This document shows positions 1-30,762 of a stretch of 64,000 bases of DNA, piece after piece. The translations under genes and the position numbers were made by a program. The first letter of the stretch is position 1. Every line of letters starts with the position of its first letter. The notes beneath the pieces are model-generated. The model did not search any database. It saw only the letters and a program-made list of their open reading frames with translations, and was not told where the DNA came from. Source of the stretch: Octopus sinensis (taxonomy: Eukaryota); assembly GCF_006345805.1 (NCBI RefSeq), contig NC_043017.1, positions 3,968,001 to 4,032,000 of the forward strand, in the 5' to 3' direction.

Positions 1-621
1 GAAATCTTTATTAAAATTACGATTACAAATCGTATCAAATTGAAGCGTTTGTTAATATTTGAATAATTGTTTACCAATGTTGTAAAATATATTGTACTGA
101 AAATTAAATTTACCTTTCTTTCTAAATGTTATTAAATCATATAAAAAGTATTAGAATATTTGAAGTTTCTACAAGCTTACTTTAGAATTAGTATTTTAAC
201 TGAAATTTTTATTATCATTGGGGTGGGGGACACTTTCTGGAATTTGGTGCTAACTGCAGCAAAGCGGATTTTTTCCTGCTGAGACGTTACGTTCTTCATG
301 GGCTTTATTTGATATCAAGGTTATCGATTTCCTGAAAAGTGAAAAAGATTGAGAAACCAATAAATAAACAGGGAGATTCATGACCTATTAAGGAGTTAAA
401 TAGTGTACAAAGGATAGTCACTGTGGCCCATATGACTTGAAGCTGCACACAGTAGGTTCGGTATTTACTCGAAGCCAGACAATTTTGTCACCGCTCTTTG
501 CGCTAACAAGCTAAGATGAAATATTTCATAAGCTATTTTAACTACACATGATTTCTATCACATGAGAATCAGAATACGTTCTATTTATCGGTTATATGAC
601 GTTTCATATAAAACTACTATT

Positions 622-1204: not shown

Positions 1205-1318
1205 CTTGCCCATCTCATCTTCCAAAATAATTTTCGATGGGATGGCCTTTGCTTTCCATTCAGCGACAGCGGAAGATGTGATTCCATCTTGCTTAGCACC
1301 GTGCTTTGATCCCCAAAT
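1205..1318 (-). CDS. IF-A exon 10 (LTD)
   Basis: catctttAG / GTAAGA; 114 nt; IWGSKHGAKQDGITSSAVAEWKAKAIPSKIILEDEMGK. Confidence 0.85.
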
Positions 1319-2240: not shown

Positions 2241-2350
2241 CTTCACAATTTTGCCAGAACCAAACACGTTACCATCAGTAAATTTATGGGTGTGGCTTTT
2301 GCCATTTTCAAAGGTTTGTGTCAGTTTCCAATTGATCATGTTGGAGCACC
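2241..2350 (-). CDS. IF-A exon 9 (LTD), 110 nt, apparent 1-nt deletion
   Basis: NMINWKLTQTFENGKSHTHKFTDGNVFGSGKIVK aligns with IF-B exon 9 (111 nt), but read in phase 0 gives GAPT* (TGA 2338-2336). Confidence 0.75.
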
Positions 2351-3308: not shown

Positions 3309-3397
3309 GCTCGGAGGCTTAGTAAGGTCTTCAAGTGTAATGTATTTTCCCTTGGTTTCTAAGTCAACAATTTTCACAACGCTTTGGCGTGGCATAG
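3309..3397 (-). CDS. IF-A exon 8 (LTD start)
   Basis: ttttgaacAG / GTGAGT; 89 nt, phase 1->0; MPRQSVVKIVDLETKGKYITLEDLTKPPS. Confidence 0.75.
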
Positions 3398-5895: not shown

Positions 5896-5984
5896 TTGCT
5901 GCTGATGCTAGTGCGTTAGCGAGTGCCTTCTCACTCTCTGTTTGATATCCACCCATAGAAGCTGCAATTGATTTCATGTCCATC
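5896..5984 (-). CDS. IF-A exon 7 (proximal tail)
   Basis: ttttacAG / GTAAGT; 89 nt, phase 2->1; MDMKSIAASMGGYQTESEKALANALASAA, homologous to IF-B and IF-C exon 7. Confidence 0.8.
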
Positions 5985-7656: not shown

Positions 7657-7835
7657 TTTTTCTCTCCTACATCAAGGAGTTTGCGATAGTGTGCAATCTG
7701 AAGTTTCATGGAGAGAATATCATCTGTCACGACTTTTAATTTACGATACTGAATTTCAGTCTCGCGCTCGTAGGTCACCTTCTCATGTTCACTCTTTTGT
7801 ATGGCTTGATCTCGTTGATATTCTAGTGTCCTTAT
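7657..7835 (-). CDS. IF-A exon 6 (coil 2 end, divergent helix termination motif)
   Basis: tctctttatAG / GTAAAT; 179 nt, phase 0->2; ...DDILSMKLQIAHYRKLLDVGEK. Confidence 0.85.
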
Positions 7836-8059
7836 CTATAAAGAGAAGATGAATAATGCAAATATTATTACCAAAGAATTATTGAGGCATGATCGTGAGT
7901 AGTATATTCAGAGGGTATTCGGACTAAATTTGACAATTTTTTTATGTCTCTTTTACAGAAGAAGATTCATGAATTGGCGTTTGAAGTTGGAGGCTAGTTA
8001 GCTGATATGGGGGACTAGAAACCAATCAAATATTTGAATACCAGTCCACATTTTTTAAC

Positions 8060-8400
8060 TGGGCCTGAGGCTCAAATCAAAAATCTATGCGAAACTGCTT
8101 GAAACTGTGGTCAATACCTGGCGGATGAGGGTTACTGCTGAAAGGTCATATGTGTGCAGTAGCTGGATTCGGCTACTTGACATGCCTCCGGAAAGGACCA
8201 GATGTAGTTGTCCAAGAATTCCTACAGATTCCCCAACCCTAATTTCTAGCCTTTCTAATACCCCCATTACAATCCCATAGATTGTGTGGGTCGCGCGCTC
8301 TACCTGCAACGCTAAAGCCGAACTGGTGGCTAAATCAAGGCATTTGAAGATCTTCCCGGGGATACAGTGAAGAAGGCATGCGCAAGGGTCTGGAGCCGTC
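8060..8400 (-). mobile_element. Possible degraded LINE reverse-transcriptase fragment (L1/Tx1-like)
   Basis: GC-richer block; fragments GQLHLV and GIDHSF loosely resemble DNLHL and DRVDH. Confidence 0.25.
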
Positions 8401-8443
8401 TTGGGGGTGGCTACTTTACGTATTATTATTAATTAAAAAGGCG

Positions 8444-8990
8444 GCGAACTGGCAGAATTGTTAGCATGTTGGACGAAATGCTTAGTGGTATTTCGCCCGT
8501 CGCTACGTTCCGAGTTCGAATTCCGCTGGGGTCGATTTTTCCTTTCATCCTTTCGGGGTCGAAAAATTAAGTACCTGTTGCACACTGGGGTCGATGTATC
8601 CCCAAGAGCCAATAACTTGTGACTGTCGAAACCCAGCAGATTGCCCACTTGACCAGGCGTACATTATATACTCCATTGTATATGAGGCAAAAATAACAGC
8701 AACGTTACATGATGACCTAACCGGAAAAAAGTTACTTTTTTTAAGCATGGTACTTGTACTATCCGAAGCGATAAGTTACAGGGACGTAAACACACCAACA
8801 CTGATTGTCAAATGGTGGCGGGGTACAAACAAAAACAAAAGGACACGCATATACGCAACTCATTCCTACAGCTGGAGCAACGAGAAATAAATTGTCTGGC
8901 TCAAGAATACAACACACAGCCAGGTCCAGGAATCGAACTCAGTACCTCGTAATTGTGAGCCTAATGCGCCAACCACTAAGCCATGCGCCA
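8444..8990. mobile_element. SINE1 copy (+, ~8444-8605) and an opposite-orientation SINE3-related fragment (~8740-8990)
   Basis: ggcggcgaactggcagaa...gagttcgaattccgc; gtaaacacaccaacac block. Confidence 0.65.
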
Positions 8991-9027
8991 TATGTATGTG
9001 TGTGAGGAAGTGTGTGTGTGTGAGTGC

Positions 9028-9078
<51 letters not shown>

Positions 9079-9477
9079 AACGACAGGCTTCCTCCAGCTG
9101 GATATATAATGAATGATTTTTTTTACGTATACAGGAGAGTTAAAGTAGCATTGATGCGAAAACCATGATATTTTGTTGATCTGAAGAGCTAGCCTTCTAT
9201 ATCTGTATTGATTTGTAAATGCACAACTGTACTGTACAATGAGTAGCATGAACTGAAGTGCAGGCATGTAAAATATTTATTATACACTGAAATTATTATT
9301 TCATGATGAAGGCTGCGAAACGGCCGTTATCCTACGGTCATCAAGTGGTTAAGTACATATATTTTCCTTTCATACCTCCTAACCTTTTATTACATACATT
9401 CTGTTATGTATGTGAATAGATAGATTTATTTATCTATTTATCTATTTATTGAGTGATAGATTGATTATTTGACTTAA

Positions 9478-9895
9478 GTAGGCGCAGAAGTGGCTGTGTG
9501 ATAAGTAGCTCGCTTACCAGCCACATGGCTCCGAGTTCAGTTCCACTGCGTGGCACCTTGGGCATATATTTTCTGCTATAGCCTCTGGCCGACCAAAGCC
9601 TTGTGAGTGGATTGGATTTGGTAGACGGAAATTGAAAGAATCCAGTCGTATATGTATATATATATATGTATATATGCATTGTGTGTTTGTGTGTCTGTGT
9701 TTGTCCCCCACTATCGCCAGACAATCGATGCTGGTGTGTTTACGTCCCCGTAACTTAGCGGTTCGGCAAAAGAGACCGATAGAATAAGTACTAGTCTTAC
9801 AAAGAATAAGTCCTGGGGTTGATTTGCTCGACTAAAGGTGGTGCTCCAGCATGGCCACAGTCAAAATGACTGAAACAAATAAAAGAATAAAAGAA
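9478..9895 (+). mobile_element. SINE3 (tRNA-derived, CORE-like ccttgggca segment), full length
   Basis: aggcgcagaagtggctgtgtg...gactgaaacaaataaaaga; copies at 14215, 22095, 26030, 40995, 45345, 47630, 62795. Confidence 0.8.
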
Positions 9896-9918
9896 TAAGA
9901 GAATGTAATGTTCCTTAC

Positions 9919-10005
9919 CTGAATTTCATATTCACTCAGTTTAACCAAGATCTCCTTGTTTCTTTCCTTACCGTCCAGAAAATCTCTGCTCTTCAGCCGC
10001 TTTAT
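9919..10005 (-). CDS. IF-A exon 5 (coil 2)
   Basis: ctccatAG / GTAAGG; 87 nt; IKRLKSRDFLDGKERNKEILVKLSEYEIQ; flanks match IF-B exon 5. Confidence 0.75.
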
Positions 10006-10588
10006 CTATGGAGGTGATAAAATTATAACTATCATATTTTATTTATTTTTAATACTGCCGTCACTGAATGGACATTACACAGATAAGGTACAAATGGTCG
10101 GGTTGTTTTGTTCAAAATTACTTATGACAAAAACAGGCATGAGAAGTAAAACTTACACAATTACTCGACTCCCTTCCCCACTCCATATAATTTGAAAGAA
10201 GATGAGAGCTTGCCTGAAAATAAGAATATCTGTTCTTAGTCCATTCAAATTTGTCCGCTATACATGCAACTTCTTTCCCCATAGCAATCGGAGTAAAACT
10301 GCTTGTCCATCTTAGCGGAAAAGAAGGCTACAGTGTGATCTACTCGAGAGACACCACTACAACTATAAAACATAACTCTATCTAGAACTTAGCGATGCCT
10401 GGACACTGAACGTGTGTTATGCAAGACTCTTTCATCGTTCTACAAGCAAGTTGGATGTATCCTGATGATGATATAACACGTCTGTAGAGTTTCTTCGGAG
10501 CTTGCAATCAAGACCGAAGATGTTTGAAATGTCTTCATAATAAAAGATAAGCTAATCAGTTGGTCTTTAATAGTCGCACCTATCAAAC

Positions 10589-10727
10589 AAGAAGAAGAAG
10601 AAGAAGAAGAAGAAGAAGAAGAAGAAGAAGAAGAAGAAGAAGAAGAAGAAGAAGAAGAAGGAGAAGAAGAAGAAGAAGAAGAAGAAGAAGAAGAAGAAGA
10701 AGAAGAAGAAGAAGAAGAAGAAGAAGA
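10589..10727 (+). repeat. (GAA)n microsatellite, ~46 units
   Basis: Direct reading; produces the spurious poly-R and poly-F ORFs. Confidence 0.97.
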
Positions 10728-10960
10728 TTGTCTTCTCTTTGTATAAAAGATGAGCTACAGCGAATATTCTTCTCAGTACCACAGACTTGCTTGTCAGATG
10801 TTTGACTTTAACCAGTAGTAGTTGGGGAGCATCATAGCCATGTGTTGAGAGGAAATCTTTTGGATTCGGATAATTCATCTCTGGAAATATGGGTGTTTCG
10901 TTCAACATCTTTAAAGAACTCTTATTCAGGAAGCTTTTTAGCATGATAGGCTACTCGACG
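10728..10960. repeat. Unclassified interspersed repeat; second copy at ~11860-12125
   Basis: agttggggagcatcatagccat(g/a)tgttgagagg shared; each copy abuts a trinucleotide run (GAA, GAT). Confidence 0.6.
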
Positions 10961-11149
10961 TGATGGAAGTTTTAAGTAGGCCCCCACCCCGCCTGCAAGT
11001 TCATGCGCTGTTTATCTTGATATAAGATCACCATGTCGCACACATATGGTTGTGATGCATGTGTCTGGTGTACTCTTATCAGACGAGTAGTCATGATGGG
11101 TATACTGGTCTCCGTATATTCTACTCCAGTGTCACTTTGGTGGCATACT

Positions 11150-11508
11150 CTACTCTTTCACTAGACATAGCATGCCCAGCTGACAAGGTATGCAATAAGG
11201 AAGAAAGAAAAGTAGAGAGATATGATAGGTTAGCTTGGGAAGTTAAGCAGTTGTGGTCGATAAAAAAGGTAGTAGTAGTATCAATAATTATCGGAGGTCT
11301 GGGAACAGTGAGCAAAAATCTCGAGAAGTACGTTGAACAAATAGGGGCTGCAATAAGAGTGGAGCACTTGCAGAAAACAGCACTGCTTGGAACCGCCCGA
11401 ATACTCTGGAAGGTGCTCGAAAAATAAGAGGTGTTACCTTAGTTCACTGGTAGTGAACAACTGACACTGCAGTGCATCTCCAGCATTAGAAGCTGTGAAA
11501 AGGCAACG

Positions 11509-11590
<82 letters not shown>
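11150..11590 (+). mobile_element. 5'-truncated R4/Dong-like non-LTR element (restriction-like endonuclease end) ending in (TAA)n
   Basis: LDIACPAD...ERKVERYDRLAWEVKQLW...IIIGGLGTV...LQKTALLGTARIL. Confidence 0.82.
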
Positions 11591-11594
<4 letters not shown>

Positions 11595-12750
11595 CTTTTC
11601 TACTATAGGCACAACACCTCAAATTTGAGAGAAGTGATTGAGTTGAGGACATCGACTCCAGTGCGTAACTGGTACTTATGTAATCCACCCGGAAAGGATG
11701 AAAAGAAAAGTCGAACTCGGTTAATTTGAACTCAGAACGTAGCAACGTGCAAAATACTGCTAGGCATTTCGTCCTGCGTGCTAACGACTCTGCCAACTCA
11801 CCGCCTTAATGATGATGATGATGATCATGAGGATAATGATGATGAGGATGATGATGATGATAGATGTCCTGATGCAGTACCAGACTGTGGCTCTCATGGC
11901 TTCTGATCTTGGAGGTGTTATCTTGTACATTGTTTTGTCTTGGTATAAAGATGCGCTACAGCAAATATTCTTCTCAATACCACAGATATGCTTGTTAGTT
12001 GTTTGACCATTTGAGCATGTCCCTTATTGGCTGATGATACGTGCATATCTGATCACGAGCAGAAGTTGGGGAGCATCATAGCCATATGTTGAGAGGGATT
12101 CTTTGAGGTTTGCATAATTCACCTCTGTTAGACCTTTGTTATGCCAAACTCACGGTGCAGAATGTTCTTAAATCTCTCACAGGATATGCTAATAGCATTG
12201 GCTATTTGATTTATAGCTAATTTCCTATCATCCATCAGCTTGTGGTGAACACGGTCAATGTTTTTACCGGTGGTGGCAGTTGCAGGAAGTCCACACTCTC
12301 CCATCCCATCTTTTGCACTGTTGATAAAGCTGGGGCCTCATCCCCTAATGTAGCAACCATTCCCACATACATGGAAGCTGAAATTAATGCATACAAGATT
12401 TTTAAGACTCTAGCATCCTCTTCATAATCAGCGTATTTTGCATATCGATCAATATAAATTTGGTATCGGAAATAGCAATGTATATATGACTTTTCAGCAA
12501 CATGGCTCATTCTATCTGAAATAAGTTGAAATGTGTCTACGTTCTTCCCGTAACTATCATACACGACTATAGTATGGTAAGTAAGGTTCTTTAAATCTTT
12601 CAATTGAAAGGCATTTTCTGTGGGATTATATAAGATTAACGGATTTCAAAATGACAACATACCAGGAGAACAAACACAATATATAAGGTTAATTTTCCAA
12701 CAGTTTTAAAGCATATGAATATATTTGTTCTTTTCTATGTATTTCTTTAC

Positions 12751-12897
12751 CTCTTTTTCATGTGTACTTTTCAAGTCAGCAATGATATCCTCATATTCGG
12801 CGCGTAAATCTTCAATTGCTTTTTCGTAATCCTCCGAACGATATTCGAAGGATATTTTCTGTAAATCTGACATCACTATCTTCAATGCATTGTCACC
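12751..12897 (-). CDS. IF-A exon 4 (linker 12 / coil 2 start)
   Basis: tatttgcAG / GTAAAG; 147 nt; GDNALKIV...YEKAIEDLRAEYEDIIADLKSTHEKE. Confidence 0.8.
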
Positions 12898-13336
12898 CTG
12901 CAAATAGTAAGTTAAACAAAACTAAATAAAATGGACGTTAGAAAGCTACTATAGGTTTCAAATTTTGGCACAAGGCCAGGAATTTCGGGAAAGTGGGCGT
13001 AAGTCGATTACAACGACCTTAGTGCTCAGCTGGTGCTTTTTTAGAGACCACAAACGGATGAAAGGCAAATCGACTTCGGCGGAATTTGATCAAAGACTTA
13101 GATGACAACAGATTTACTATCAGGATCCGAGCCACTGACACTGTGGTTTGTAGTCTACCAACTCAGTCAGATAATTGCAATTGATCACTTGAAAAGAAGT
13201 GATTCTCTAATAATGATTGCGAAAGTGAAGCCATCTGATTCAAGGAAGCCTTAAACAAGAAAATAACCAAAACCGTTATGGCAATTTTCCTGCAAAGGAA
13301 ATAACAGGAAATGGAAAAAAATAAAAGCAACATTAC

Positions 13337-13432
13337 GGCCTTATGGAAATCCTTTTTCATATCAAGTTCGTCTTTCAGCTCCTCGACCTGGTTAGTTAAC
13401 TCGACATTTCGAGTATTTTTTTCCTTTAGTTT
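13337..13432 (-). CDS. IF-A exon 3 (coil 1B end)
   Basis: 96 nt, same length as IF-B exon 3; KLKEKNTRNVELTNQVEELKDELDMKKDFHKA; AG / GTAATG. Confidence 0.85.
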
Positions 13433-14602
13433 CTACAGAAGGAAAAAACAAATATTTTCGTCAATGTTTCTTATAAAACATGCATTCAATAAGCTTTTAT
13501 AATTCTTCCTGGATGGCAGATAAAGTACAAAAAAACAATAAGCAAGGCGAAATCGGTACGAACAGAATCTGTTTTCCGTCGTCTCACTCACACTATTACA
13601 AGCAGTTTCTGCAAAACTTTAATAACCGGCGTTTTAGAATCAAGCGACATTATTTGCTGAATAACTAATAACGATGACATAGTTCGCAATGCGTTATTCT
13701 TTACAGCTGTTCCGGGTCCGAAAACCATCTAGGGTCTCGACACAAGTATAGCGATAGATCAGGTTTCTGGTATTTGTTTAACTTCCTCCCCTCTGTAGTA
13801 AGGGCTGCATAAAAACTTATATATACCGAAATTGTCATCTGTAGCTTCATAACGGATGAGGAGAGCACCGAACTGAGTCATGGACCGTTGCCTGACTGCG
13901 GAACGGAACGAAGGCAAGTAAGGTAGTACTGATTCATAGAAGTCTCTGTCTGTCTGAAGGTAGTTTTCTATTTGATGTCGTCACACTTACGGTTGAACAT
14001 CTGTATTCTGAGAGATGTCGAGCTTCAATGACATAATAACCCAAAGCTCACTCCAGTTCCCGGGCCACATCAAGTTCAACCATCCCCCGGAGTACCTCAC
14101 CAGTGAGGTTGCGGCTGGAGGAGACCGAGGAAAGTTAGGCCGGCAGCACCAGGTTCAAAGGGGAACGGATGCCAAGATCACTGAATTTCCTAGACGGTTT
14201 CGCCTTTTACCAGTGGGTTTGGTAGACGGAAACTGAAAGAAGCCCGTCGTATATAGGTATATATATATATGTGTATGTGTGCGTTTGTTTGTGTGTCTGT
14301 GTTTGTCCCCCCAAACTTGGCTTGACAACCGATGCTGGTGTGTTTACGTCCCCGTAACTTAGCGGTTCGGCAAAAGGGATCGAAAGAATAAGTAGTATGC
14401 TTCCAAAGAATAAGTCCTGGGATCGATTTGCTCGGCTAAAGGCGGTGCTCCAGCATGGCCACAGTCAAATGACTGAAACAAGTAAAAGAGAGAGTAAAAG
14501 AGTATTCATTGGAGTTATTTTTTCTTATTTCTCTCTGTTTATACAGCGTAACTCAAAGACCATGCGCCTCCCCCAAAGTACACACATATTCACACACGCA
14601 TT

Positions 14603-14634
<32 letters not shown>

Positions 14635-14809
14635 TGTATGTATGTATGTATGTGTGTACGTATGTACGTATGTACGTTTATATGTATATCTGTATGTATG
14701 CATGTGTACGATGAATGTGTGTCCGTTTGTGTGTGTGTGAGTGTATGTTGGTGAGAAAAAGAGAGAGAGTCTAAGAGAGAGATTATGATTCCAAAGTTTT
14801 ATAACGTAC

Positions 14810-14939
14810 CTCTCTAAGATTGTTACATCTGTTCTTCCACTCTTCAAGTTCACTTTCCATCCCGCTGCTGTTGCTTGCTTCATTGCAGCGGGAAACTTCA
14901 TTCTTTAATTCATTGTTCTGCGTTTCCATTTTTAGCAAT
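14810..14939 (-). CDS. IF-A exon 2 (coil 1B)
   Basis: tttttctgtcAG acceptor and GTACGT donor, both as in IF-B exon 2; 130 nt, phase 2->0; LLKMETQNNELKNEVSRC...WKNRCNNLRE. Confidence 0.8.
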
Positions 14940-16457
14940 CTGACAGAAAAATAGTTTTTCTAAGGAATATTTATTTATCCAAGGTAGGGATTTTGGGAAC
15001 TGGCAGACACTGTGATACTGAAGCATAGTTTTATGTTTTATTAAAATAGTACCACACGTTATGACAAAATTATACCAAACGACCAGCAAAACGGCCATTG
15101 TTTCTTATTCGTTTTTGTTTTTTGTAACTTTGTTCTGTACATAGGAAAATTAACTTTACACAGATTTGTTACTTTGAGAAAGAGGGGTAAATATTATCTC
15201 ACCTTTTCACTCTACTTGTACCTTTCATTGGAGCTTTTGGACTGAATGTATGTAAAGAAAGCTATATATCGGTGAGTCACCGAATAGATACACAAATGGC
15301 GATAGACCGAGCGAGATAAGGAGTCCATATATGGTTGCATGTACGACAAGAAATAGTGGCAAAGTACATCTATAAAAAACAGAAAACAATGACTCGGTGA
15401 CGGATGGAGTGTACGCTGCCTCAGCCGTGAGTTAGGGCTTAACAGATAATTGCAAATGAGCGGACACCAGCAGGGATTTATGTTTATAACCAGGATACAA
15501 AGACAATATCCAAGTTTAGATTTATGCTTGTATGGAGTTAAGATGTCTTGCAAACAACTTGCACATGCAAGTGCTACCAGTCAAAAGCTCCGTATACCGG
15601 AAGCCAGCAAGTGTATGGGGTCATCAGGAGAGAATGCATGCCGTTTCGGGGCCTACCTCTCGACGGCATCAATGCGCACCGACCCCCCTCACTGATATGA
15701 GGCCCCACTTGCTAGATCAGCTGGTTATGAAGAACTCAATATACTTCTAGCCATCGCTAATTGTCTCTTTTTAACCAAATCCAGTGGCTAGCCTTCTCCA
15801 CTGTAGATTGGATATCAGTCATGGTGGTATTGACTTTTCCATGAGTTAGGCCTAACGATAACAACAGTCGTCTCACGCTGTGTCCTACAAACTCTCTACA
15901 TCCGACTTCGATAGGAAAATGTTCCGCTTTCCAGTTGTTAATAAATAAAACTCCCTACAGTTTATGACTGCTTATAATTTGAAATGCCAATTTGAGCTGC
16001 GTTTACGCGGATTATATTAACCTCGCATTTGCTTAATCACGAGGAGATCGGAACTGATCACTAGTACTAGAAATGTAACTGTTTCGGAAATTAGTAACTT
16101 TTTTAATTTTAAAGTGTTCACTTAAACCCTTGACAACGGTTGACGCAAATATGCGATCACACTTTTGCTTGCTTACCCGCGGTTCACGTAAATATACGAT
16201 GTAGAGCTGTCCTACATCTATCACGGACTTTTTTAGCGGCTGACGTATGTTTACGTTCGCTATCGTGTACTTTATCTCTTGAGGTGCGCGCACTCGCCGT
16301 CCCGTGCATTATCTTAGCTATTTAAGGTTACGTTCAAGTCATGAGAGTAGCGGTAGACCAATGGCATGCGGATACTTTACATGCATAATACCGTGTTTTG
16401 AGTCGTACCACGCACAAGCTATTTTCTGAACTTGAGCAGAATAACTCGTGCATATCA

Positions 16458-16844
16458 TCTCTCTATATATAAACGCCAGTTTGTGTGTCTGTGTGTCTGT
16501 CAGGTTGTACCCTCACCCTGACCACGGCTTTCAACCGATTCTGATAAAACTTGGCACACACATAGCCCAATGTCATAATTCAAAACTAACGCAGCGAAAA
16601 TTTTGAAAAGTTCCCCCAGTTCTGAAAAAGATCGATAAATTCGACATGGGGTCGAGAATCAGAAACACAAGCCACAGACTGTCTAGGGGACGCAACTCGA
16701 CCTTTTTAACTCGCAAAAAAAATTTACCATCATTTTTTTTCCATTTTTTTGCTATTTTTTTGCTATTTTTTGGCTATAACTCTCTAAAAATGCTTTATAG
16801 TTATTTCCCTTACAAACCCGAGCAACGCCGGGCGATACTGCTAG
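16458..16844 (+). mobile_element. Non-autonomous Helitron
   Basis: 5' A|TCTCTCTATATATAAA; 3' CCCG-agcaacgc-CGGG hairpin then CTAG|T; last ~60 nt shared with 39938-40450. Confidence 0.75.
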
Positions 16845-17531
16845 TATTATGATAAATAGCTTCACAGAGTTCGTTTTCATAAACCGGTAGACGTTAAATG
16901 TACGACGCTATGTTATTGGAAATAGACGCGAGCTCGTTGGCACTTGTGTGTTTGTGTGGCCTCGGTAGATAAAAAAATCCCGGAGCAGTGTCTCGCATGC
17001 TTCGGGTAATACCGGCGTCAAGGGGTTAAACAACTTTCGGACCTTATATTTAAAAAAAAAAAGACCATTTTTAATGAGCTTCACAGAATCATTTTGCTTC
17101 AACGCTTAGTCCAATAATAATGTCTATTGAATACATTATGAGAAAATAAGATACTGCAGGCTCGCTAGCTACTAATTACAATTTATGCTACTTTCTTTAT
17201 TCTTTGATGTAATTCGCAATACTTACAGTGTAATAGCAAAAACAGATTACCACTAAATGTCGCATTTCACTAGTTAGTACCACTGAATGGTCCTCATCTT
17301 CCATTTCTTAGAAAACGATAAAAATAGGTACTAGTAATAAATAGTATTTAATACAATATGCTTCGACCGTTGGTTTTGTGTCCAGTTAAACAATAACTTG
17401 CACTGAGGACTGATTGGTATTTACTCGCATTATGTATAATAAATGCAAAGAAAGAACCACGTAAAGTGGTGGGAGCGATGAGTTCTCAGAGAGCTTATTA
17501 TCTCAGTGAATTGCTAAGATCGGTCGGTGCC

Positions 17532-17562
<31 letters not shown>

Positions 17563-17599
17563 AAGAAATAATCGAAATATGTCTACGGTCTGCCCGTGA

Positions 17600-17985
17600 C
17601 CCTTCAACGCATCACCTATGGCAACAGGCATCAAGAGTACCCCCATTTTTTTCTGTGAAGAGAAGGACTTGGAGTACTGTACAGATGTTGCTCGTCTTCT
17701 GCACAAGCTTGGAGTACCACAGTACAAACCCAAGCATTGGAGGCTATTCATTGACAGCAGCAAGCGATCGCCGAAATGTGTTCTGCTGCACAACGGCAAA
17801 ACGTTTGCCTCTTTACCCCTCGCTCACTTGACTACATTGAACAAGTATGAAGCGGTGAAATATGTGCTGGAGAAAATTCGTTATGATCAGCGACAGTGGC
17901 TTATTTGTGTTGACCTGAAGATGGGGGATTTTTTGTAGGGACAACAGTCTGGATTCACCAAGTACCCACCTTTTCTTTGCATGTA
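17600..17985 (+). mobile_element. DNA transposase fragment (WRLFIDSSKRS...VLLHNG type; superfamily not assigned)
   Basis: ORF 17618-17938 ...HWRLFIDSSKRSPKCVLLHNG...WLICVDLK, continuing past a stop as GQQSGFTKYP. Confidence 0.65.
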
Positions 17986-18129
17986 GTCTATTTAATAGTG
18001 ATATGATTGATTTGATTTTTGATTTTTCCAGTTTCAGCTCATGAGCTGTGGCCATGCTGGGGCACCGCCATTTATGAAGTAAAAACCGACCAGTCCATCA
18101 GATGTAGTTACACATCGCTGGTCACAATG

Positions 18130-18345
18130 CGTTCGCATTGTTTTAGCCTTCGAATGACGCCACCCCGCTGGCTAAGCGAGCAGGCCAACAGAAGAAAGAG
18201 TGGTGAAAGAGTACAGCAGGGATCATCACACCCCGGCGGAGCCTCGTGGAGCTTTTAGGTGTTTTCGCTCAATAAACACTCACAACGCCCGGTCTGAGAA
18301 TCGAAACCGCGATCCTACGACCGCGAGTCCGCTGCCCTAACCATT
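18130..18345 (-). mobile_element. SINE2 partial copy
   Basis: Reverse complement of the SINE2 head and body (ctcaataaacactcacaacgcccggtctg). Confidence 0.7.
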
Positions 18346-18507
18346 AGCAATGTTGCTAATCTATTTTTTTTTTGTTTAATGCCTAATTAGAATCCTCAAA
18401 CTCTCTCAAATATGGAAAGAGTTAAAAGGCAATTAAGAGAAATTAACTGAAGATGGACGTTTATGATGCTTAGAGGAAATCAAACATTATGAGCAAATTT
18501 CACTTAC

Positions 18508-18857
18508 TGTTTTTGCAATTCTCCAACTTCCTCAATAAGCGATTGATTTTCACATTTTACTGCTACTAGTTCCTTACTCTTCTCTTGTTTCTCTTTCCTT
18601 GTTTTATCCTGCTGGGATTTTATTTCGAATGTGATCGCTTCACTCTCAGTTTTAATCTTCTTTTCTAAGAGTTGTTCAAGACGTTTGTTCTCTTCATGTA
18701 AATTACCAATTCGGGATAAGAGTTTGGCAAGCTTTGAGTTCAACTCTGACATTTCTTTCTTTTCTTTCCCCATTTCATCGCTTGCACCAGTATTTTCTTT
18801 AGTTTGAATTGTAGCTTCTATTTGCGTCTTCTCACGTATTAAAAGTTCTTCAGCCAT
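18508..18857 (-). CDS. IF-A exon 1 (head + coil 1A), cytoplasmic intermediate filament
   Basis: MAEELL...EKKEMSELNSKLAKLLSRIGNLHEENKRLE resembles the IF coil-1A motif; in-frame TGA upstream of ATG; ends AAA CA|GTAAGT (phase 2, 350 nt). Confidence 0.85.
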
Positions 18858-22080: not shown

Positions 22081-23132
22081 ATGTGATATTATGCATGGAG
22101 AATTTTTCCCCCTAGCATTGCTTGACAACCGATGCTGGTGTGTTTACGTCCCCGTCACTTAGCGGTTCGGCAAAAGAGACCGATAGAATAAGTACTAGGC
22201 TTACAAAGAATAAGTCCCGGGGTCGATTTGCTCGACTAAAGGCGGTGCTCCAGCATGGCCGCAGTCAAATGGCTGAAACAAGTAAAAGAGAAAAGAGAAA
22301 AGAGTATATATTGATATCATTTTATTGCCCTTTTTCCATACAATTTAACCAAAAGGTCTTCGGACTCGAATTAGAAAGTACAAGTTTGTTAATGGAATAT
22401 GGAATAATGTTCTCTAATTTGGAAGCAAATTTAATCATATTTTCAAAAGATATCGTTGCATATCTTCCTCGATTCTTATACAGCATAAATTTAGTATAAA
22501 ATTTTGTAATGTAAAATATCATAAAGTACAAAACATTTGAAAGCAAAACACACCAGGCATCGATATCATATTATCTCGGTAACTTGTAGAATACCAATCT
22601 TTATTGAAATTACGATTACAAAAACTACCAAGGTGAAGAGTTTGTTAATATTTGAATAGTTATTTAACAATGTTGAAAAACATATTGTATTGAAAAATGA
22701 ATTTTCTCTTATTTTCTATAATTATCTTAAATGTTTCAGAATCATTAAAAATTATTAAAACAGAAAATTGGAATTTTTTTAGAAATTTACTTTAGAATTA
22801 GTATTTTTACTAAAATTTTTATTTAAAAGAAATAAAGAGATTTTCTGAAACTTGGTGCTAACAGGAACAAAAATGAATTTTCTCTGCTGCAACATTACGT
22901 TCTTCAGGAGTTTATTTTGATCACAACTGTAGCGCATTCCTGAAAAATGAAAAAATATTGAGAAATTAATAAATAAACAGGGTTATTCGTGAACTATTAA
23001 GGAGTTGAGGCACCACAAGATTAACCATCTTCGTGTAACGAGAATAGCCGTTCTGGCCTGTGTATCACAAAACTTTACACAAGAGTCAGAAGTCACAATA
23101 GATATTTCTTTATTACCCATAAGGGGATAAAC

Positions 23133-23550
23133 ATCATCATCATCATCATTGTTCGACCGTGGTCGAGACAATGGAATTTACCATGCTACGCCAGACTTCA
23201 CGGTCCATCATGGCATTACGGAGGTTCTGTTGCTGGATGCCTGTATCCCTGGAGATTACATCAGGGTAGGAGAGTGTGCGCCCTCTGGTATTGCGAGTAG
23301 ATGGCTTCCAGAGGAGAAGAGTAGAAATTACCTCTTTTTCAGCTCTACAACAGGGGATAAACAAGGACAGACAAAGGGATTAAATCGATTACATCGATCC
23401 CAGTGCGAAGCTGGTACTTTATTTATCGACCCCGAAAGGATGAAAGGCAAAGTAGACCTCGGCGGAATTTAAACTCAGAACGTAACGGCAGACGAAATAC
23501 CGCTAAGCATTTCGCCCGGCGTGCTAACGTTTCTGCCAGCTCGCTACCTT
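23133..23550 (-). mobile_element. RTE-type LINE 3' fragment with (GAT)n tail (~23133-23330) joined to a SINE1 copy (~23345-23550)
   Basis: LLLWKPSTRNTRGRTLSYPDVISRDTG...MMDREVWR; same family as 34347-34615. Confidence 0.78.
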
Positions 23551-23704
23551 AGAAGTTACAATACATTAACTCTCTTTTTTTGCGCTAATAAGTTAAAAAT
23601 GAAACATTTCTTAGGCTGTATTAAATTCACGAGATTTCTCTCAGATGAAAATCAGAATACGTTCTGTTTATCGGTTACTCGACGTTTCATATATAACTAG
23701 TATT

Positions 23705-23710
23705 TTTATT
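23705..23710 (-). terminator. Candidate poly(A) signal AATAAA of IF-B
   Basis: Same aligned position as in the IF-A 3' UTR. Confidence 0.3.
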
Positions 23711-23981
23711 GTGTACTGAAGCAAATTATGTCGCTATTTTAAATGTATGAAAAACATTGCTGTTGGAAAATATAACGTCTGTCTCAAAGCCATGCCGACA
23801 GAAAGAGTTTATTGAAACAGACGCAGCAAGGTCAGGAAATATTTCTATAAATTTTCAGTATTAAAATCACATTCCAAACGTTACTTAGAGCAGTGAACTG
23901 AATCAGTCTTACTACATACTACTAACTGCCGCTAAGCTTATTAAGATTGTTGAAGAAATGCATATCGAAGCGGTATGCTTT

Positions 23982-24011
23982 TCAAATGCAGATTTTATTG
24001 TGCCCTGTTCT
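23982..24011 (-). CDS. IF-B putative terminal exon (RTGHNKICI*, or NRAQ* from the AG 2 nt further on)
   Basis: tttatttctAG acceptor; region aligns with the IF-A terminal exon; exact acceptor ambiguous. Confidence 0.4.
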   Translation of the reverse strand, partial: RTGHNKICI

Positions 24012-24177
24012 CTAGAAATAAATTTGTACATTGTATATAATATGGTATATCAGGGAGACAAATGACTACATAGATCAACCCTCAAAGTGCATGAAATTAG
24101 AAAGAAAAATGTACTCGATGGCTATAATGGAAAAAGTGTAAGAGAAAATGTGTGCTAAAGAATAAATTAGATCTTAC

Positions 24178-24291
24178 CTTGCCTTTGTCGTCTTTCAAAG
24201 TAATTTTTGATGGGATGACCATAGTTCCCCATTGAGCGACATCGGAAGATGTGATGCCATCTTGTCCAGCACCGTGTTTTGATCCCCAAAT
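24178..24291 (-). CDS. IF-B exon 10 (LTD)
   Basis: tatctttAG / GTAAGA; 114 nt; IWGSKHGAGQDGITSSDVAQWGTMVIPSKITLKDDKGK. Confidence 0.88.
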
Positions 24292-25151
24292 CTAAAGATA
24301 GATATAAGAGAATTCATTATAATAACATCATTAAGAAAAATTAGAAATGTAAACACGAGGTTTTGTCGATTACATGGACTCCAGTTTTTCACTTGCACCT
24401 TATTTTATAAACTCGATGTGGTGGACGGAAATGTTGAATGCGGTAGGATTTGAAAAATACGAAGAGCCGGAAACAAATGTCAAAGCGTATTTTTCGGATA
24501 CCGTAACGATTCTGCAAAGGCAAAAATGTCTGAAAGGGTACTGAGTAGAAGGTTTACGAATGCTATCATCCTCAGTATGTAACTGGTACTTTATATAATT
24601 TGTCGACCTCAGAGGAATGAAGGTAAAGTAGACATTAGCAGGATTTGAACTAAGAGTGAGAAGAGGTGGAGCGAATAACATTAGGCCCTGTGTTCGACAC
24701 TCTAAACATTTTTACTCTACAGAGAATGATTAGCAATTGTTTTCTTGTCCGTGGTTACTGCGGTGGTCAGAGAGGTGGCATCCACTTCAAATTACCTCCA
24801 AAAATATCATTTGGAAGTAACTACTAATGATTTTAATGTAATTAATATATGCACAAATTGGAAACTGGTTTGCTAACACCATTGGTAAGTAAATGAATTC
24901 CTTCTCTTACCCACCTCTACTCTGGACGAAAATAATAGAAGGAAAATATTACAGTTAACATATCTGGAACAACATACCTAATATTACTCTACATTGTCAT
25001 GTGGAGTGCGGACTCCCAGCAGTCGATATTCCATTCTTGCCATAGTGTCGCCATCTTTTTTATAAATTTAAATTACTGCCTATAATATCTAATGTTTAGT
25101 TAATATACGTTATAAGAATAATTAACATTTTAAAAAATAACACAAACTTAC

Positions 25152-25262
25152 CTTGACAAATTTACCAGAACTAAACACATTACCATCGGTAAATTTATGG
25201 GTGAAGGTCGTGCCATTTTCCAGGGTTTGGGTCAGTGTCCAGTTCTTCATGTTTGTTGAACC
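25152..25262 (-). CDS. IF-B exon 9 (LTD)
   Basis: ttctaatcatAG / GTAAGT; 111 nt; GSTNMKNWTLTQTLENGTTFTHKFTDGNVFSSGKFVK. Confidence 0.88.
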
Positions 25263-25544
25263 CTATGATTAGAAAGAGTATTTGTATTAAACAAAAGAAA
25301 AGAGATGTTGATGGCAATGAATTATAAGGATAGTCAATGAACCATTTGTAATTACAGAGGTAAAATATATTACAATGTTTACGTGCGTCTATATGTGTGT
25401 TCGTGTGAGCCTGCATGCATGTGAGCGGGAGAGAGCAGAGAGGGGGAGAGAGGGGGAGAGGGGGGGAGAGGGGGAGAGAGGGGGAGAGGGGGAGAGAGGG
25501 AGAGAGAGGGGAGTAGGGAAGAATGAAGATTTGCTACGGTTTCT

Positions 25545-25952
25545 TATTTCTTTATTGCCCACAAGGGGCTAAAAATAGAGGGGACAAACAAGGACAGTCA
25601 AAGAGATTAAGTCGATTACATCGACCCCAGTTCGTAACTGGTACTTAATTCATCGAGCTCGAAAGGATGAAAGGCAAAGTCGATCTCGGCGGAATTTGAA
25701 CACAGAACGTAGCGGCAGACGAAATACCTATTTCTTTACTAACCACAAGTGGTCAAAAACAGAGAGGACAAACAAGGACAGACAAATGGATTAAGTCGAT
25801 TATATCGACTCCAATGCGTAACTGGTACTTATTTAATCGACCCCGAAAGGATGAAAGGCAAAGTCGACCTCGGCGGAATTTGAACTCAGAACGTAGCGGC
25901 AGACGAAATACCGGTAAGCATTTCGCCCGGCGTGCTAACGATTCTGCCAGCT
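25545..25952 (-). mobile_element. SINE1 dimer (one head, two bodies)
   Basis: Internal junction aaagaaata|ggtatttcgtctg on the minus strand. Confidence 0.8.
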
Positions 25953-26029
25953 CGCCGCCTTGTTACGGTTTCTATCAAACAGCGGGGCCAAGTAGTGACT
26001 ACCTTGTTACGTACACAAAACTTAGAAAA

Positions 26030-26445
26030 ATCGCAGGAGTGGCTGTGTGCGTAAGTAGCTTGCTAACCAGCCACATGGTTCCGGGTTCAGTCCCACTGCG
26101 TGGCATTTGGGCAAGTATCTTCTGCTATAGCCTCGGGCCGACCAAAGCCTTGTGAGTGGATTTGGTAGACGGAAACTGAAAAGAAGCCTGTCGTATATAT
26201 GATATTATATATATATAGGTGTGTCTGTATGTTTGTGTGTCTGTTGTCCCTCTAGCATTGCTTGAAAACCGATGGCTGGGTGTTTGTGTCCCCGTCACTT
26301 AGCGGTCGGCAAAAGGACCGAAGACCGATATAGAATAAGTACTGGGCTTACAAAGTTAAGTCCCGGGGTCGATTTGCTCGATTAAAGGCGATGCTCCAGC
26401 ATGGCCGCAGTCAAATGACTGAAACAAGTAAACGAGTAAACGATG
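26030..26445 (+). mobile_element. SINE3 full length
   Basis: Matches 9478-9895. Confidence 0.8.
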
Positions 26446-26585
26446 TAAACAAAAGCGAGGAAAGAAAAATACTAATGGTCGTTGAATTATTTGCTGTCCA
26501 AGTGTATATGTATATTTATGATAAAATGGTATAAAAAGACCGTTCAAAAGCACTATTTAACCAACAGAAACCCATGCACACTTAC

Positions 26586-26689
26586 CTTTGGGAACTTAGC
26601 AAAGGTCTCAAGTTTAATGTATGTTCCATCGGTTGCTAGTTCAACGACGCTCACAGACCCACTTGTGGTGCGACTCATGGTCATTTTAT
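26586..26689 (-). CDS. IF-B exon 8 (LTD start)
   Basis: ttttgcaccAG / GTAAGT; 104 nt, phase 1->0; KMTMSRTTSGSVSVVELATDGTYIKLETFAKFPK. Confidence 0.85.
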
Positions 26690-27040
26690 CTGGTGCAAAA
26701 ATGTCCAGAGATATAAATATTTATTAATAATATGTATATGCGTGATTGTGTGTGTGTGTGTGTGTGTGTGTGCACAGAAACACAAGTTTGTGTGTATATG
26801 CTTCTATATGAATTGATACAGTAGCATACATATAGATATGTATGTATATATATGTATATATATAGATATATATATATATATTAGATATATATAAATTTTA
26901 TATATATATATATAATATATATATATACGGACATGTACATGTAGATATATATACGACAAATATATATGACTTTGAGAGAGAAATCCCCACCCCGCCACAG
27001 TCGCAACATGTCTATATATCTATATATATATATATATATA

Positions 27041-27081
<41 letters not shown>

Positions 27082-27249
27082 TGTGTGTGGTGTGGTGGTG
27101 GTGTGTGTGTGTGTGTGTGTTGTACTGGATGCGGATGGTATTTGAGGACACGTTTATGGGTTTCAAGAAAAATCTTACATAATAACATAAAAAACTATTT
27201 AACAAAATAACATAAAGATAAAGCTAAATTGTCAATTTAACAATATCAC

Positions 27250-28300
27250 ACAATAGCACCCCCTTAAGCATCGATAACTGCCTCTAGGCGGGATCGAAAT
27301 CGTTTAGAAGCTCGTATTAAGTGGTCCTTGTTCCTATCGGACATGACTCGATCTATGGCGTCTTTCAAAGAATCTTTGGCACTATGGGAGTTTTCCTTGA
27401 CATTTTTCTCAACGATCCTCTAAACACTGTAGTCCAATGGATTGAGATCTGGAGAATTAGGAGGCCAAATGTTGGGGGTGATGTGATCATGCAAATTGTC
27501 GGCCATCCATTCTAGTGCAAATTAAGCCTTGTATGATGGTACAGAATCTTGTTGGAAGACTTACGGCCTTCCAGTGCATACACTGTTGATCCAAGGATTA
27601 ACAACTTCATTCAGAGCCTCAGTATACGCAGCAGCATTCACCCTAAGGCCTTCTAGAAAAAAGTAAGGAGGAGTTACATGTCCTTCATTTCTAACAAATC
27701 CCAAAACTATGACACTTGCAGGAAATTTTGTGTGCATTACACTTGCAGTCTCAGAAGAGCCTACACATAGTCATCTGACAGTTCTTCTAGTAGTTTTCTG
27801 GTCCTGGTCAAAGTTTTTCTCATCTCAGAAAGTTTGTTCAAAAAACTTTTGTGTCTGATTAAACGGTTTACTTTCGTTTTGTTTTGGGGTTGTTTTTTTC
27901 TGCCATAAATTTACTTCACCTCATCACGTAAAATTTGTACCTGATGTCTTCATGGACAACATTTCCGATTGCTTTTTTCTGACACACGAAATCTTCTTTG
28001 CAATCGACCTCATTGATTTTCCAGGATTGTCTTCAATATTTTTCTTAACTTCTTCAATAAATTCAAGTGTCCTGCTAGAATCAGATCGTTTGAAACGTTT
28101 TTACGTTTTGATGCAGGTAATACGCTTCCGTCATTTTTCTCTAATTCATACCGAATCTTGTGGACAAAAGATCTTGCAACATTCAGAGAACGAGAAATTT
28201 TTAAATCCCCATGTTTAGCCTTCGAAGCCCCAACCACAGCATGCTCTTTTCATTTCATTAGTAAGAATAGGGCCTGCCATTGCTGTTTTCCGAAACAGAA
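27250..28300 (-). mobile_element. Degraded Tc1/mariner (maT-like) transposase
   Basis: ISRSLNVARSFVHKIR (HTH) and WPDNLHDHITPNIWPPNSPDLNPLDY; many stops; ends approximate. Confidence 0.78.
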
Positions 28301-28409
28301 GTTCAGTAAAACAAATAGTCAAATAAAATAATAACTAAGAATGCATGTGTCCTCAAATACCGTCCTCACCTTGAATATATATATGCATATATGTATAAAT
28401 GTATATATG

Positions 28410-28446
<37 letters not shown>

Positions 28447-28737: not shown

Positions 28738-30408
<1,671 letters not shown>

Positions 30409-30419
30409 TATATATATAT

Positions 30420-30480
<61 letters not shown>

Positions 30481-30481
<1 letters not shown>

Positions 30482-30717: not shown

Positions 30718-30762
30718 TCCAGTACCGCTGCCGTAGTCTCCTTTAGAGAGAATTAGAAATAA

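What the first reader, a model, noticed from the sequence alone, without database searches (positions are those of the whole stretch)
7657..18857. IF-A rod is 49 aa (seven heptads) shorter via four separate in-exon deletions
Seen: relative to IF-B, exon 2 is 19 codons shorter, exon 4 six, exon 5 ten and exon 6 fourteen, all in frame. The spacing from the coil-1A LN to YRKLL is 281 aa in A and 330 aa in B. Known: protostome IFs and lamins have a long rod (~350 aa), while chordate cytoplasmic IFs lost one 42-aa block in coil 1B. Inference: an independent route to a short-rod IF. Four frame-preserving deletions suggest the gene stayed under selection while shortening.
Basis: partly seen in the sequence, partly recalled or inferred. 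Interest (0 to 1): 0.7.

Follow-up and report, generated by a model that had tools for sequence, protein, structure and literature searches.

The report
Expressed octopus filament protein with shortened rod
An octopus gene from a tandem cluster of intermediate-filament genes encodes a protein that is really made and whose coiled-coil rod is 49 residues shorter than its neighbour's, an unusual exception to the rule that rod length in this family is fixed, although nobody has tested whether it still builds filaments.

Summary
The window is Octopus sinensis chromosome CM016879.1. IF-A (minus strand, 18857-7657) and IF-B share all rod splice sites and phases. IF-A's exons 2, 4, 5 and 6 are 19, 6, 10 and 14 codons shorter. 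LN-to-YRKLL spacing is 281 in IF-A, 330 in IF-B, and 335 in 153 of 183 mollusc/annelid relatives. No hidden exon or alternative splice site restores the length.

The refutation test was run and failed. Three O. vulgaris transcript ORFs in a published supplement are colinear with IF-A, use the same junctions and have spacing 281. A peptide specific to IF-A's own tail exon was detected in skin mucus.

The rod ORF is under selection: 0 stops against 8-14 expected, with heptads and a/d core residues retained. It nevertheless evolves about twice as fast as its neighbours (omega about 0.8-1).

It is not a chordate-style short rod. The 19-residue coil 1B loss breaks the heptad phase and is predicted to leave a hinge. 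The head is acidic, and Pfam Filament scores below threshold.

My reading is a fast-evolving, expressed, atypical IF paralogue that is probably not a self-assembling filament former. The RefSeq model's tail is a mis-join.

The parts
18508..18857 (-). IF-A exon 1 (CDS from the ATG at 18857). It encodes an acidic head of about 29 aa, coil 1A, L1 and the start of coil 1B. It is 24 codons shorter than IF-B exon 1, all in the head. The donor is CA|GTAAGT, phase 2.
   Evidence: O. vulgaris cDNA ORFs
14810..14939 (-). IF-A exon 2 (coil 1B), 19 codons shorter than IF-B exon 2. The loss lies in the same stretch as the chordate 42-residue deletion and leaves the sequence NEASNSSGM, where a hinge is predicted.
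13337..13432 (-). IF-A exon 3 (end of coil 1B), 32 codons, the same length as in all comparators.
12751..12897 (-). IF-A exon 4 (L12 and the start of coil 2), 6 codons shorter (gaps of 2 and 4).
9919..10005 (-). IF-A exon 5, 10 codons shorter. It corresponds to the length-variable stretch that is predicted non-helical in IF-B (residues 293-313).
7657..7835 (-). IF-A exon 6 (coil 2B with the stutter, and the rod end QIAHYRKLLDVGEKK), 14 codons (two heptads) shorter. It is the most constrained rod exon (omega 0.34).
5896..5984 (-). IF-A exon 7 (start of the tail), 93% nt identical to exon 7 of the downstream gene D.
3309..3397 (-). IF-A exon 8 (first exon of its own lamin-tail domain). The acceptor is shifted relative to IF-B and the exon is 5 codons shorter. 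O. vulgaris cDNA reads ...ASAA|TMPRQSVVK... across this junction.
2241..2350 (-). IF-A exon 9 (lamin-tail domain). Near its start this assembly has a run of A one base shorter than the O. vulgaris cDNA implies, which shifts the frame here.
1205..1318 (-). IF-A exon 10 (lamin-tail domain). It encodes QDGITSSAVAEWK, the peptide identified by mass spectrometry in O. vulgaris skin mucus.
305..331 (-). IF-A exon 11 (EIDNLDIK plus the stop codon). It gives a 472-aa protein, matching the 477-aa O. vulgaris ORF, which carries 5 residues upstream of the Met.
22904..48676 (-). IF-B, the long-rod comparator (P0002, 552 aa). Rod exons are at 48676-48255, 42945-42759, 39645-39550, 38120-37956, 35574-35458 and 34904-34684. 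Tail exons run down to 22904.

Best explanation
IF-A is a real, transcribed and translated member of an octopod tandem cluster of L-type (lamin-like) cytoplasmic intermediate-filament genes. The order on the minus strand is C, B, A, D. After an old duplication, which by intron divergence pre-dates the O. sinensis/O. bimaculoides split, its rod-coding exons evolved about twice as fast as its neighbours'. They lost 49 codons through several in-frame intra-exonic deletions, and the head lost 24 codons along with its basic character. What was preserved is the open frame, every splice site, the heptad core, the rod-end motif region and the gene's own lamin-tail domain. The four losses are not equivalent. 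Fourteen residues (two heptads) were removed cleanly from coil 2B upstream of the stutter. Ten residues in exon 5, and two of the six in exon 4, came from linker or length-variable stretches. The other four in exon 4 came from the start of coil 2. Nineteen were removed from the middle of coil 1B, in the same stretch where chordates lost 42. This last loss shifts the heptad phase by 5 and leaves a Ser/Asn/Gly patch predicted to be a hinge. Inferred, not shown: the protein still forms a parallel coiled-coil dimer. With an acidic head and mismatched coil 1B and coil 2 lengths it probably cannot build canonical 10-nm homopolymers. If it enters filaments at all it does so as an accessory or partner-dependent subunit, as filensin does, alongside cluster relatives that were found in the same skin mucus samples.
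For: Gene structure and deletions. Transcription, splicing and translation: three O. vulgaris paralarval transcript ORFs are colinear with IF-A, have spacing 281 and carry IF-A's own tail. Each is supported by 9-10 peptides and 27-28 PSMs, and the peptide QDGITSSAVAEWK is encoded only by IF-A exon 10 among the cluster genes compared here. Selection on the ORF and the coiled coil: 0 stops against 8-14 expected; heptad score z=6.8; hydrophobic residues at 63% of the a/d positions defined on B, against 49-54% in neutral simulations. Fast evolution: for A against B, dN 0.56, dS 0.73, omega 0.77, with exons 1-5 near 0.9 and exon 6 at 0.34. B orthologues give omega 0.44. Between O. sinensis and O. 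vulgaris, A is 93.4% identical and D 96.9%. Structure: the register breaks at residue 142. AlphaFold2 predicts helices 25-139, 144-247 and 254-330, with pLDDT<50 at 140-144. IF-B has one helix from 96 to 292, with pLDDT of 94-97 over residues 111-240. The 42-residue gap of vimentin relative to B falls at about B 154-196, inside exon 2. Head net charge is -4, against +4 to +10 in 11 relatives. Age: A/B introns are 70-77% identical, whereas B orthologue introns are 83-92%.
Against: No assembly data exist, so the filament-incompetent, accessory-subunit part is inference. The AlphaFold models are monomers with low pTM (0.32 and 0.28). My heptad scoring is a crude home-made Viterbi. dN/dS is pairwise Nei-Gojobori at near-saturating divergence, with no likelihood branch test. 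A's sister relationship within the cluster is unresolved, because A, B and the P0005-type gene are about equally distant. No orthologue outside O. sinensis and O. vulgaris could be retrieved. The stored part of the peptide table shows only one peptide, from the tail, so direct mass-spectrometry evidence for rod peptides was not seen.
Confidence: 0.6

Rival explanations
1. One reading: IF-A is a fully competent filament-forming IF and a second, independent origin of the short-rod (S-type) design, with a new axial repeat.
For: It is expressed and translated. The ORF, heptads and core positions are under selection. The rod-end exon is constrained, with omega 0.34. The coil 1B loss lies in the same stretch as the chordate deletion. 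The spacing of 281 is, from memory, close to the 289-293 of chordate IFs.
Against: The coil 1B loss is 19 residues, not a multiple of 7, and produces a phase shift and a predicted hinge. The head is acidic and lacks the Arg-rich motif present in all 11 relatives; established work on headless IF mutants shows that basic heads are needed for assembly. Pfam Filament scores 32.6 bits, below the cut-off of 40. Omega is about 0.9 over exons 1-5.
Confidence: 0.17
2. IF-A is a decaying duplicate (a pseudogene or one nearly so), and its shortened rod is simply degeneration.
For: Omega is near 1. The Pfam score is below threshold. There is a frameshift at exon 9 in this assembly. No orthologue is annotated in O. 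bimaculoides or Argonauta.
Against: There are no stop codons where 8-14 are expected. All rod indels are in frame. All splice sites are kept. Core positions are conserved beyond neutral expectation. O. vulgaris has full-length spliced transcripts with an intact tail and a peptide from the last large exon.
Confidence: 0.06
3. The shortening is an assembly or annotation artefact.
For: The RefSeq model is demonstrably wrong in its tail. The assembly carries at least two suspicious small indels in this cluster.
Against: The deletions are 18-57 nt and sit inside exons that are otherwise about 40% diverged. They are flanked by conserved splice sites and are reproduced exactly in independent O. vulgaris transcript assemblies.
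Confidence: 0.01

Closest known systems
Protostome L-type cytoplasmic IF proteins (cephalopod 60/70 kDa neurofilament proteins, Cornu aspersum NF70, and the neighbouring IF-B/D)
   Same: IF-A descends from them. It has the same 11-exon layout and intron phases as IF-B, coil 1A and rod-end motifs, a stutter about 38 residues before YRKLL, and a lamin-tail domain in the tail.
   Different: The rod is 49 residues shorter than IF-B's and 53-54 shorter than the 334-335 norm, with losses in segments that are otherwise length-invariant. The head is acidic and only 29 aa. Pfam Filament is below threshold. Protein evolution is about twice as fast.
Chordate S-type cytoplasmic IFs, which lost 42 residues (six heptads) from coil 1B (PMC4829535, PMC3065449)
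   Same: Coil 1B is shortened in the same stretch, and the overall rod is of similar or smaller size.
   Different: The origin is independent. Only 19 residues are lost from coil 1B, the loss breaks the heptad phase, and a hinge is predicted there. The remaining 30 residues are lost from L12 and coil 2, which chordate IFs keep.
Filensin (BFSP1), the vertebrate lens beaded-filament protein
   Same: It is an IF-family protein with an abnormally short rod (279 aa, with a 29-residue truncation in coil 2). It does not form regular filaments alone and needs a partner (PMC2119801). IF-A is 30 residues short on the L12/coil 2 side. This is an analogy for how IF-A might work.
   Different: The two are not homologous as a subfamily. 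Filensin has a di-arginine head motif and a long repeat tail. IF-A keeps a lamin-tail domain and also lacks part of coil 1B. No partner dependence has been shown for IF-A.
Isomin (a collembolan cytoplasmic IF) and other divergent invertebrate IFs
   Same: It has short acidic head and tail segments and departs from the rod consensus, yet was accepted as an IF protein (PMC3065449).
   Different: Isomin keeps the conserved coil 1B and coil 2 lengths; IF-A does not.

Membership tests
Intermediate filament protein family (Pfam PF00038 Filament) | Profile score at or above Pfam's gathering cut-off of 40 bits | tested here: not met
   IF-A scores 32.6 bits (E 8.9e-8), with only profile positions 1-192 matched. 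IF-B scores 104.8 and a canonical octopus NF 181.2.
Intermediate filament protein family | Descent from an IF gene: shared exon/intron structure, synteny and alignable introns | tested here: met
   All rod and tail splice sites and phases are shared with IF-B. Introns align collinearly at 70-77% identity. The gene sits in a tandem IF cluster.
Intermediate filament protein family | Central alpha-helical rod with heptad periodicity | tested here: met
   Heptad score z=6.8 against shuffles. Hydrophobic residues occupy 63% of a/d positions and 19% of the others. AlphaFold2 predicts helices 25-139, 144-247 and 254-330.
Intermediate filament protein family | Consensus motifs at the start (LNDRFA-type) and end (EIATYRKLLEGEE-type) of the rod | tested here: met
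   The motifs are ELNSKLAKLLSRIGNLHEENKRL and LQIAHYRKLLDVGEKK. Both are recognisable but carry several substitutions in otherwise near-invariant columns.
Intermediate filament protein family | Fixed lengths of the rod subdomains | tested here: not met
   The exon 2, 4 and 6 segments are 43/49/49-56 residues, against 62/54-56/63 in 19 comparators. Spacing is 281 against 330-343.
Intermediate filament protein family | Stutter at a conserved position in coil 2B | tested here: inconclusive
   A crude register model places a d-to-a skip 38 residues before YRKLL in A and 39 before in B. The method is home-made.
Intermediate filament protein family | Basic head domain and assembly into 10-nm filaments | not testable with these tools
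   Head net charge is -4, against +4 to +10 in relatives. Assembly needs bench work.
Protostome L-type cytoplasmic IF | Lamin-length coil 1B, including the 42 residues absent from chordate IFs | tested here: not met
   Nineteen residues are missing from that stretch.
Protostome L-type cytoplasmic IF | Lamin-tail domain in the tail | tested here: met
   IF-A's own exons 8-11 encode it. O. vulgaris cDNA uses them and a peptide from exon 10 was identified. Strands are predicted for the D-type tail of P0001. Pfam LTD was not scored on IF-A's own tail.
Chordate S-type cytoplasmic IF | One clean deletion of six heptads (42 residues) in coil 1B with the phase preserved | tested here: not met
   The loss is 19 residues with a phase shift of 5, and a helix break is predicted at 140-144.

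The most novel reading that the evidence does not exclude
IF-A is a second, independent origin of a short-rod cytoplasmic intermediate filament. In this reading it is an epidermal octopus IF that assembles, alone or with a cluster partner, into filaments with a changed axial stagger, showing that rod length can be re-tuned in a protostome by piecemeal in-exon deletions rather than one six-heptad loss.
Probability: 0.17. Interest if true: 0.8.

Novelty: new variant of a known kind. Interest (0 to 1): 0.55.

Why it matters
Rod and subdomain lengths are treated as fixed across IF proteins, with L-type in lamins and protostomes and S-type in chordates (PMC3065449, PMC4829535), because the staggered packing of dimers depends on them. 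IF-A is a protostome family member that is shown to be expressed. It has lost residues from coil 1B and from coil 2 while keeping its coiled-coil character. That makes it a natural experiment on how much rod-length change the fold and the assembly can tolerate. It is directly testable with recombinant protein next to its long-rod neighbours. It also shows that this octopod IF cluster evolves quickly and undergoes gene conversion. The current RefSeq model and a published proteome label for this gene are both wrong.

Tried and rejected
1. Hidden exons or alternative splice sites that restore the length: none found.
2. Pseudogene: rejected by the stop-codon simulation, core conservation and cDNA/peptide evidence.
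3. My own interim idea that IF-A's lamin-tail exons are dead: rejected. O. vulgaris cDNA uses the shifted acceptor I had predicted and is in frame. Only a one-base A-run difference remains in this assembly.
4. My interim idea that the exons diverged faster than synonymous or intron sites, suggesting positive selection: rejected. The ratio of dS to intron distance is about 2 both for B orthologues and for A against B, so nothing is anomalous at silent sites. A global-alignment identity comparison was uninformative because its null identity was 0.62-0.66.
5. Finding A orthologues in O. bimaculoides or O. vulgaris genomes: failed. P0003, P0011, P0022 and the exon 1 ORF are not on record. The L002 and L003 loci flank a gap of about 90 kb that I could not read.
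6. The homologue and representative searches returned no close IF-A relative beyond its own record. The nearest other proteins are long-rod cluster paralogues at 44% identity or less.
7. Literature searches for a described octopus short-rod IF, for the cephalopod lens IF paper, and for Q06268/AAA16613 found nothing usable.
Full report
SOURCE AND LAYOUT. Window positions 1-28857 match Octopus sinensis GCA_006345805.1, chromosome CM016879.1, at 100% identity, in reverse orientation. All intermediate-filament (IF) genes lie on the minus strand, in a tandem cluster.
- IF-C has only its last rod exon and tail in the window (63843-56811). It is the orthologue of P0015.
- IF-B runs from 48676 to 22904 and is P0002, 552 aa, annotated '70 kDa neurofilament protein-like'.
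- IF-A has its rod at 18857-7657 and its tail exons down to 305.
- A fourth gene, D, lies just outside the window (L001 41505-59246).

I mapped the RefSeq proteins onto the DNA and fixed the split codons.
- IF-A exons are 350/130/96/147/87/179 nt. IF-B exons are 422/187/96/165/117/221 nt.
- Exons 2, 4, 5 and 6 are therefore 19, 6, 10 and 14 codons shorter, and exon 3 is equal.
- Exon 1 is also 24 codons shorter, all of it in the head.
- LN-to-YRKLL spacing is 281 in A and 330 in B.
- Every acceptor, donor and intron phase is shared, and the intron flanks align right up to the splice sites. The missing sequence is absent from inside the exons. Every alignment gap is a multiple of three.
- Stops close the frame within 0-14 codons outside each IF-A exon. 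tblastn with three long-rod proteins finds no further exon in IF-A's introns.

HOW UNUSUAL THIS IS.
- Among 183 measurable relatives, 153 have spacing 335 and almost all the rest have 330-343. The other outliers (161, 194, 236, 400) look like exon-skipped or partial models, though I confirmed this only for the 161 case.
- In 19 comparators from octopods to an annelid, the exon 2, 3 and 6 segments are invariant at 62, 32 and 63 residues. Only the exon 5 region varies, from 32 to 47 residues in octopods.
- The literature states the rule explicitly. Rod and subdomain lengths are conserved; protostomes and lamins have the L-type rod; chordates lost 42 residues, six heptads, from coil 1B (PMC3065449; PMC4829535).

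The supplement of an O. vulgaris skin mucus proteome paper (PMC11431876) lists A0A7E6FIZ9, which is exactly P0001. It also lists three ORFs from an O. vulgaris paralarval de novo transcriptome: Cluster-58773.35222.35223 and .35225.
- These ORFs are IF-A orthologues, 89-92% identical to the window sequence.
- They are colinear through the whole rod with no indel, use the same exon junctions, and have LN-to-YRKLL spacing of 281.
- Each is supported by 9-10 peptides and 27-28 PSMs.
- The one peptide row that is stored, QDGITSSAVAEWK, is encoded by IF-A's own tail exon 10 (window 1318-1205). IF-B and D do not encode it.
- IF-A is therefore transcribed, spliced as predicted and translated. Transcripts do not restore the length.

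THE GENE MODEL. RefSeq P0001 joins IF-A exons 1-7 to the tail exons of gene D, about 30 kb downstream.
- The O. vulgaris cDNAs instead continue ...ASAA|TMPRQSVVKIVELETKGKYITLEDLTKPP|NGAPNMINWKL... This is IF-A's own lamin-tail exons, entered through a shifted acceptor at window 3397.
- The resulting 472-aa protein fits both the ORF length and the peptide's position.
- In this assembly exon 9 begins GGTGCTCCAACATG. The cDNA protein implies one more A in that run, so the assembly is out of frame at that point.
- Gene D has a 2-nt deletion in exon 1, although its O. vulgaris orthologue P0003 is intact.
- I cannot tell whether these two differences are assembly errors or real.

SELECTION.
- Mutating the IF-B rod CDS neutrally to 20-40% difference yields 8-14 stop codons. 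IF-A has none; none of 2000 simulations per level was stop-free.
- IF-A's heptad score is 6.8 SD above shuffles.
- At a/d positions defined on IF-B, IF-A is hydrophobic at 63% of sites and at 19% elsewhere. Neutral simulations give 49-54% and 25-26%.
- Replacement is nevertheless fast. For A against B over the rod, dN is 0.56, dS 0.73 and omega 0.77. Exons 1-5 are near 0.9 and exon 6, the rod end, is 0.34.
- IF-B orthologues from O. sinensis and O. bimaculoides give omega 0.44. This implies omega near 1 on the IF-A lineage.
- Between O. sinensis and O. vulgaris, IF-A rod exons 2-6 are 93.4% identical and D's are 96.9%.
- These are pairwise Nei-Gojobori estimates near saturation, not likelihood tests.
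- A/B introns are 70-77% identical, whereas B orthologue introns are 83-92%. The IF-A lineage is therefore older than the O. sinensis/O. bimaculoides split.
- IF-A, IF-B and the P0005-type gene are about equally distant from each other.

STRUCTURE. The four losses differ in kind.
- Aligning IF-B to vimentin places the chordate 42-residue gap at about B 154-196, inside exon 2. IF-A's 19-residue loss falls in that same stretch.
- Nineteen is not a multiple of seven. My register model finds a phase shift of 5 at residue 142, within NEASNSSGM.
- AlphaFold2 (monomer, 34-sequence alignment) breaks the helix at 140-143, with pLDDT below 50 at 140-144.
- In IF-B the same region is one helix from 96 to 292, with pLDDT of 94-97 over residues 111-240.
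- The exon 5 loss shortens a stretch that is predicted non-helical in IF-B (293-313) and is length-variable among paralogues.
- The exon 4 loss is 2 residues in L12 plus 4 at the start of coil 2.
- The exon 6 loss is two heptads. The distance from stutter to YRKLL is unchanged, 38 against 39 residues.
- The total of 49, or 'seven heptads', is arithmetic coincidence with no structural meaning.
- IF-A's head is 29 aa with net charge -4. Eleven relatives have heads of 53-106 aa with net charge +4 to +10 and an Arg-rich motif.
- Pfam Filament scores 32.6 bits, below the cut-off of 40.

INTERPRETATION.
- Shown: IF-A is an expressed, fast-evolving IF paralogue whose coiled-coil rod was shortened under continued selection for an open, heptad-bearing frame.
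- Inferred: it dimerises. Given the acidic head, the coil 1B hinge and the mismatched segment lengths, it is unlikely to build canonical filaments alone.
- The closest functional analogy is filensin. Filensin has the shortest known rod, with a 29-residue coil 2 truncation, and is partner-dependent (PMC2119801).
- Other cluster members, the 70 kDa NF-like and ifa-1-like proteins, are found in the same mucus samples.
I give it about 0.17.

LIMITS.
- I could not retrieve an orthologue outside O. sinensis and O. vulgaris.
- There is no dimer or tetramer modelling and no assembly data.
- The mass-spectrometry peptide table is only partly held.
- In that dataset the IF-A orthologues are labelled 'omega-crystallin [Enteroctopus dofleini] AAA16613.1 / Q06268'. 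I could not explain this label.

Noticed in passing
window 5896 onward; L001 56099-59246: RefSeq model P0001 (LOC115222741, 'intermediate filament protein A-like', 479 aa) joins IF-A exons 1-7 to the tail exons of the next gene, D, about 30 kb downstream. It skips IF-A's own tail exons, which O. vulgaris cDNA and a peptide show are the ones actually used.
   Followed up: yes
window about 2337-2350 (-), start of IF-A exon 9: The assembly reads GGTGCTCCAACATG, whereas the O. vulgaris cDNA protein (GAPNM) implies one more A in the run. The IF-A tail is therefore out of frame in this assembly. This is either an assembly indel or a real O. sinensis change.
   Followed up: partly
L001 41505-41937 (gene D exon 1, outside the window): Gene D has a 2-nt deletion relative to IF-B (AATGATAAG against AA--ATGAG) that shifts the frame. 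Its O. vulgaris orthologue P0003 is intact. This probably explains why D was not annotated separately in O. sinensis.
   Followed up: partly
window 48676-34684 compared with L001 44798-51017; window 5984-5896: Similarity across the cluster is mosaic. The rod exons of B and D are 95-100% nt identical in O. sinensis, although separate B and D genes also exist in O. bimaculoides, which points to gene conversion. Exon 7 of A is 93% identical to D's exon 7, while B and D are only 73% identical there.
   Followed up: partly
window 35574-35458 (IF-B exon 5; B residues 293-313): AlphaFold2 predicts a non-helical stretch of about 21 residues containing Pro and Gly inside what is canonically continuous coil 2. 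This is the only rod stretch whose length varies (32-47 residues) among octopod paralogues.
   Followed up: partly
window 7656-7654, 34683-34681 and about 63622 (-): In IF-A, IF-B and IF-C the donor after the last rod exon reads AAG|TAA or AGG|TAA. Retaining that intron would end the protein exactly at the rod end (…GEKK*, …GEEGR*, …GEEHR*), giving a tail-less form.
   Followed up: no
PMC11431876 supplement files 2-5: The O. vulgaris IF-A orthologue ORFs are labelled 'omega-crystallin [Enteroctopus dofleini] AAA16613.1', and are reported in the paper's tables as Q06268, more abundant in senescent animals. The 'omega-crystallin' in those tables, at least where the ratio and P-value match Cluster-58773.35223, is therefore this IF protein. 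I could not explain why that label was assigned.
   Followed up: partly
window 63843-56811 (-): This is the 3' part of a further IF gene, IF-C, the orthologue of O. vulgaris P0015, with canonical spacing of 334. Its 5' exons lie beyond the end of the window.
   Followed up: partly
window 10586-10807 and 11440-11612: IF-A introns contain very long simple trinucleotide repeats that read as poly-Leu/Ser/Arg or poly-Ile/Tyr in the ORF lists. They also contain interspersed repeat copies shared with IF-B introns at 85-90% identity.
   Followed up: no
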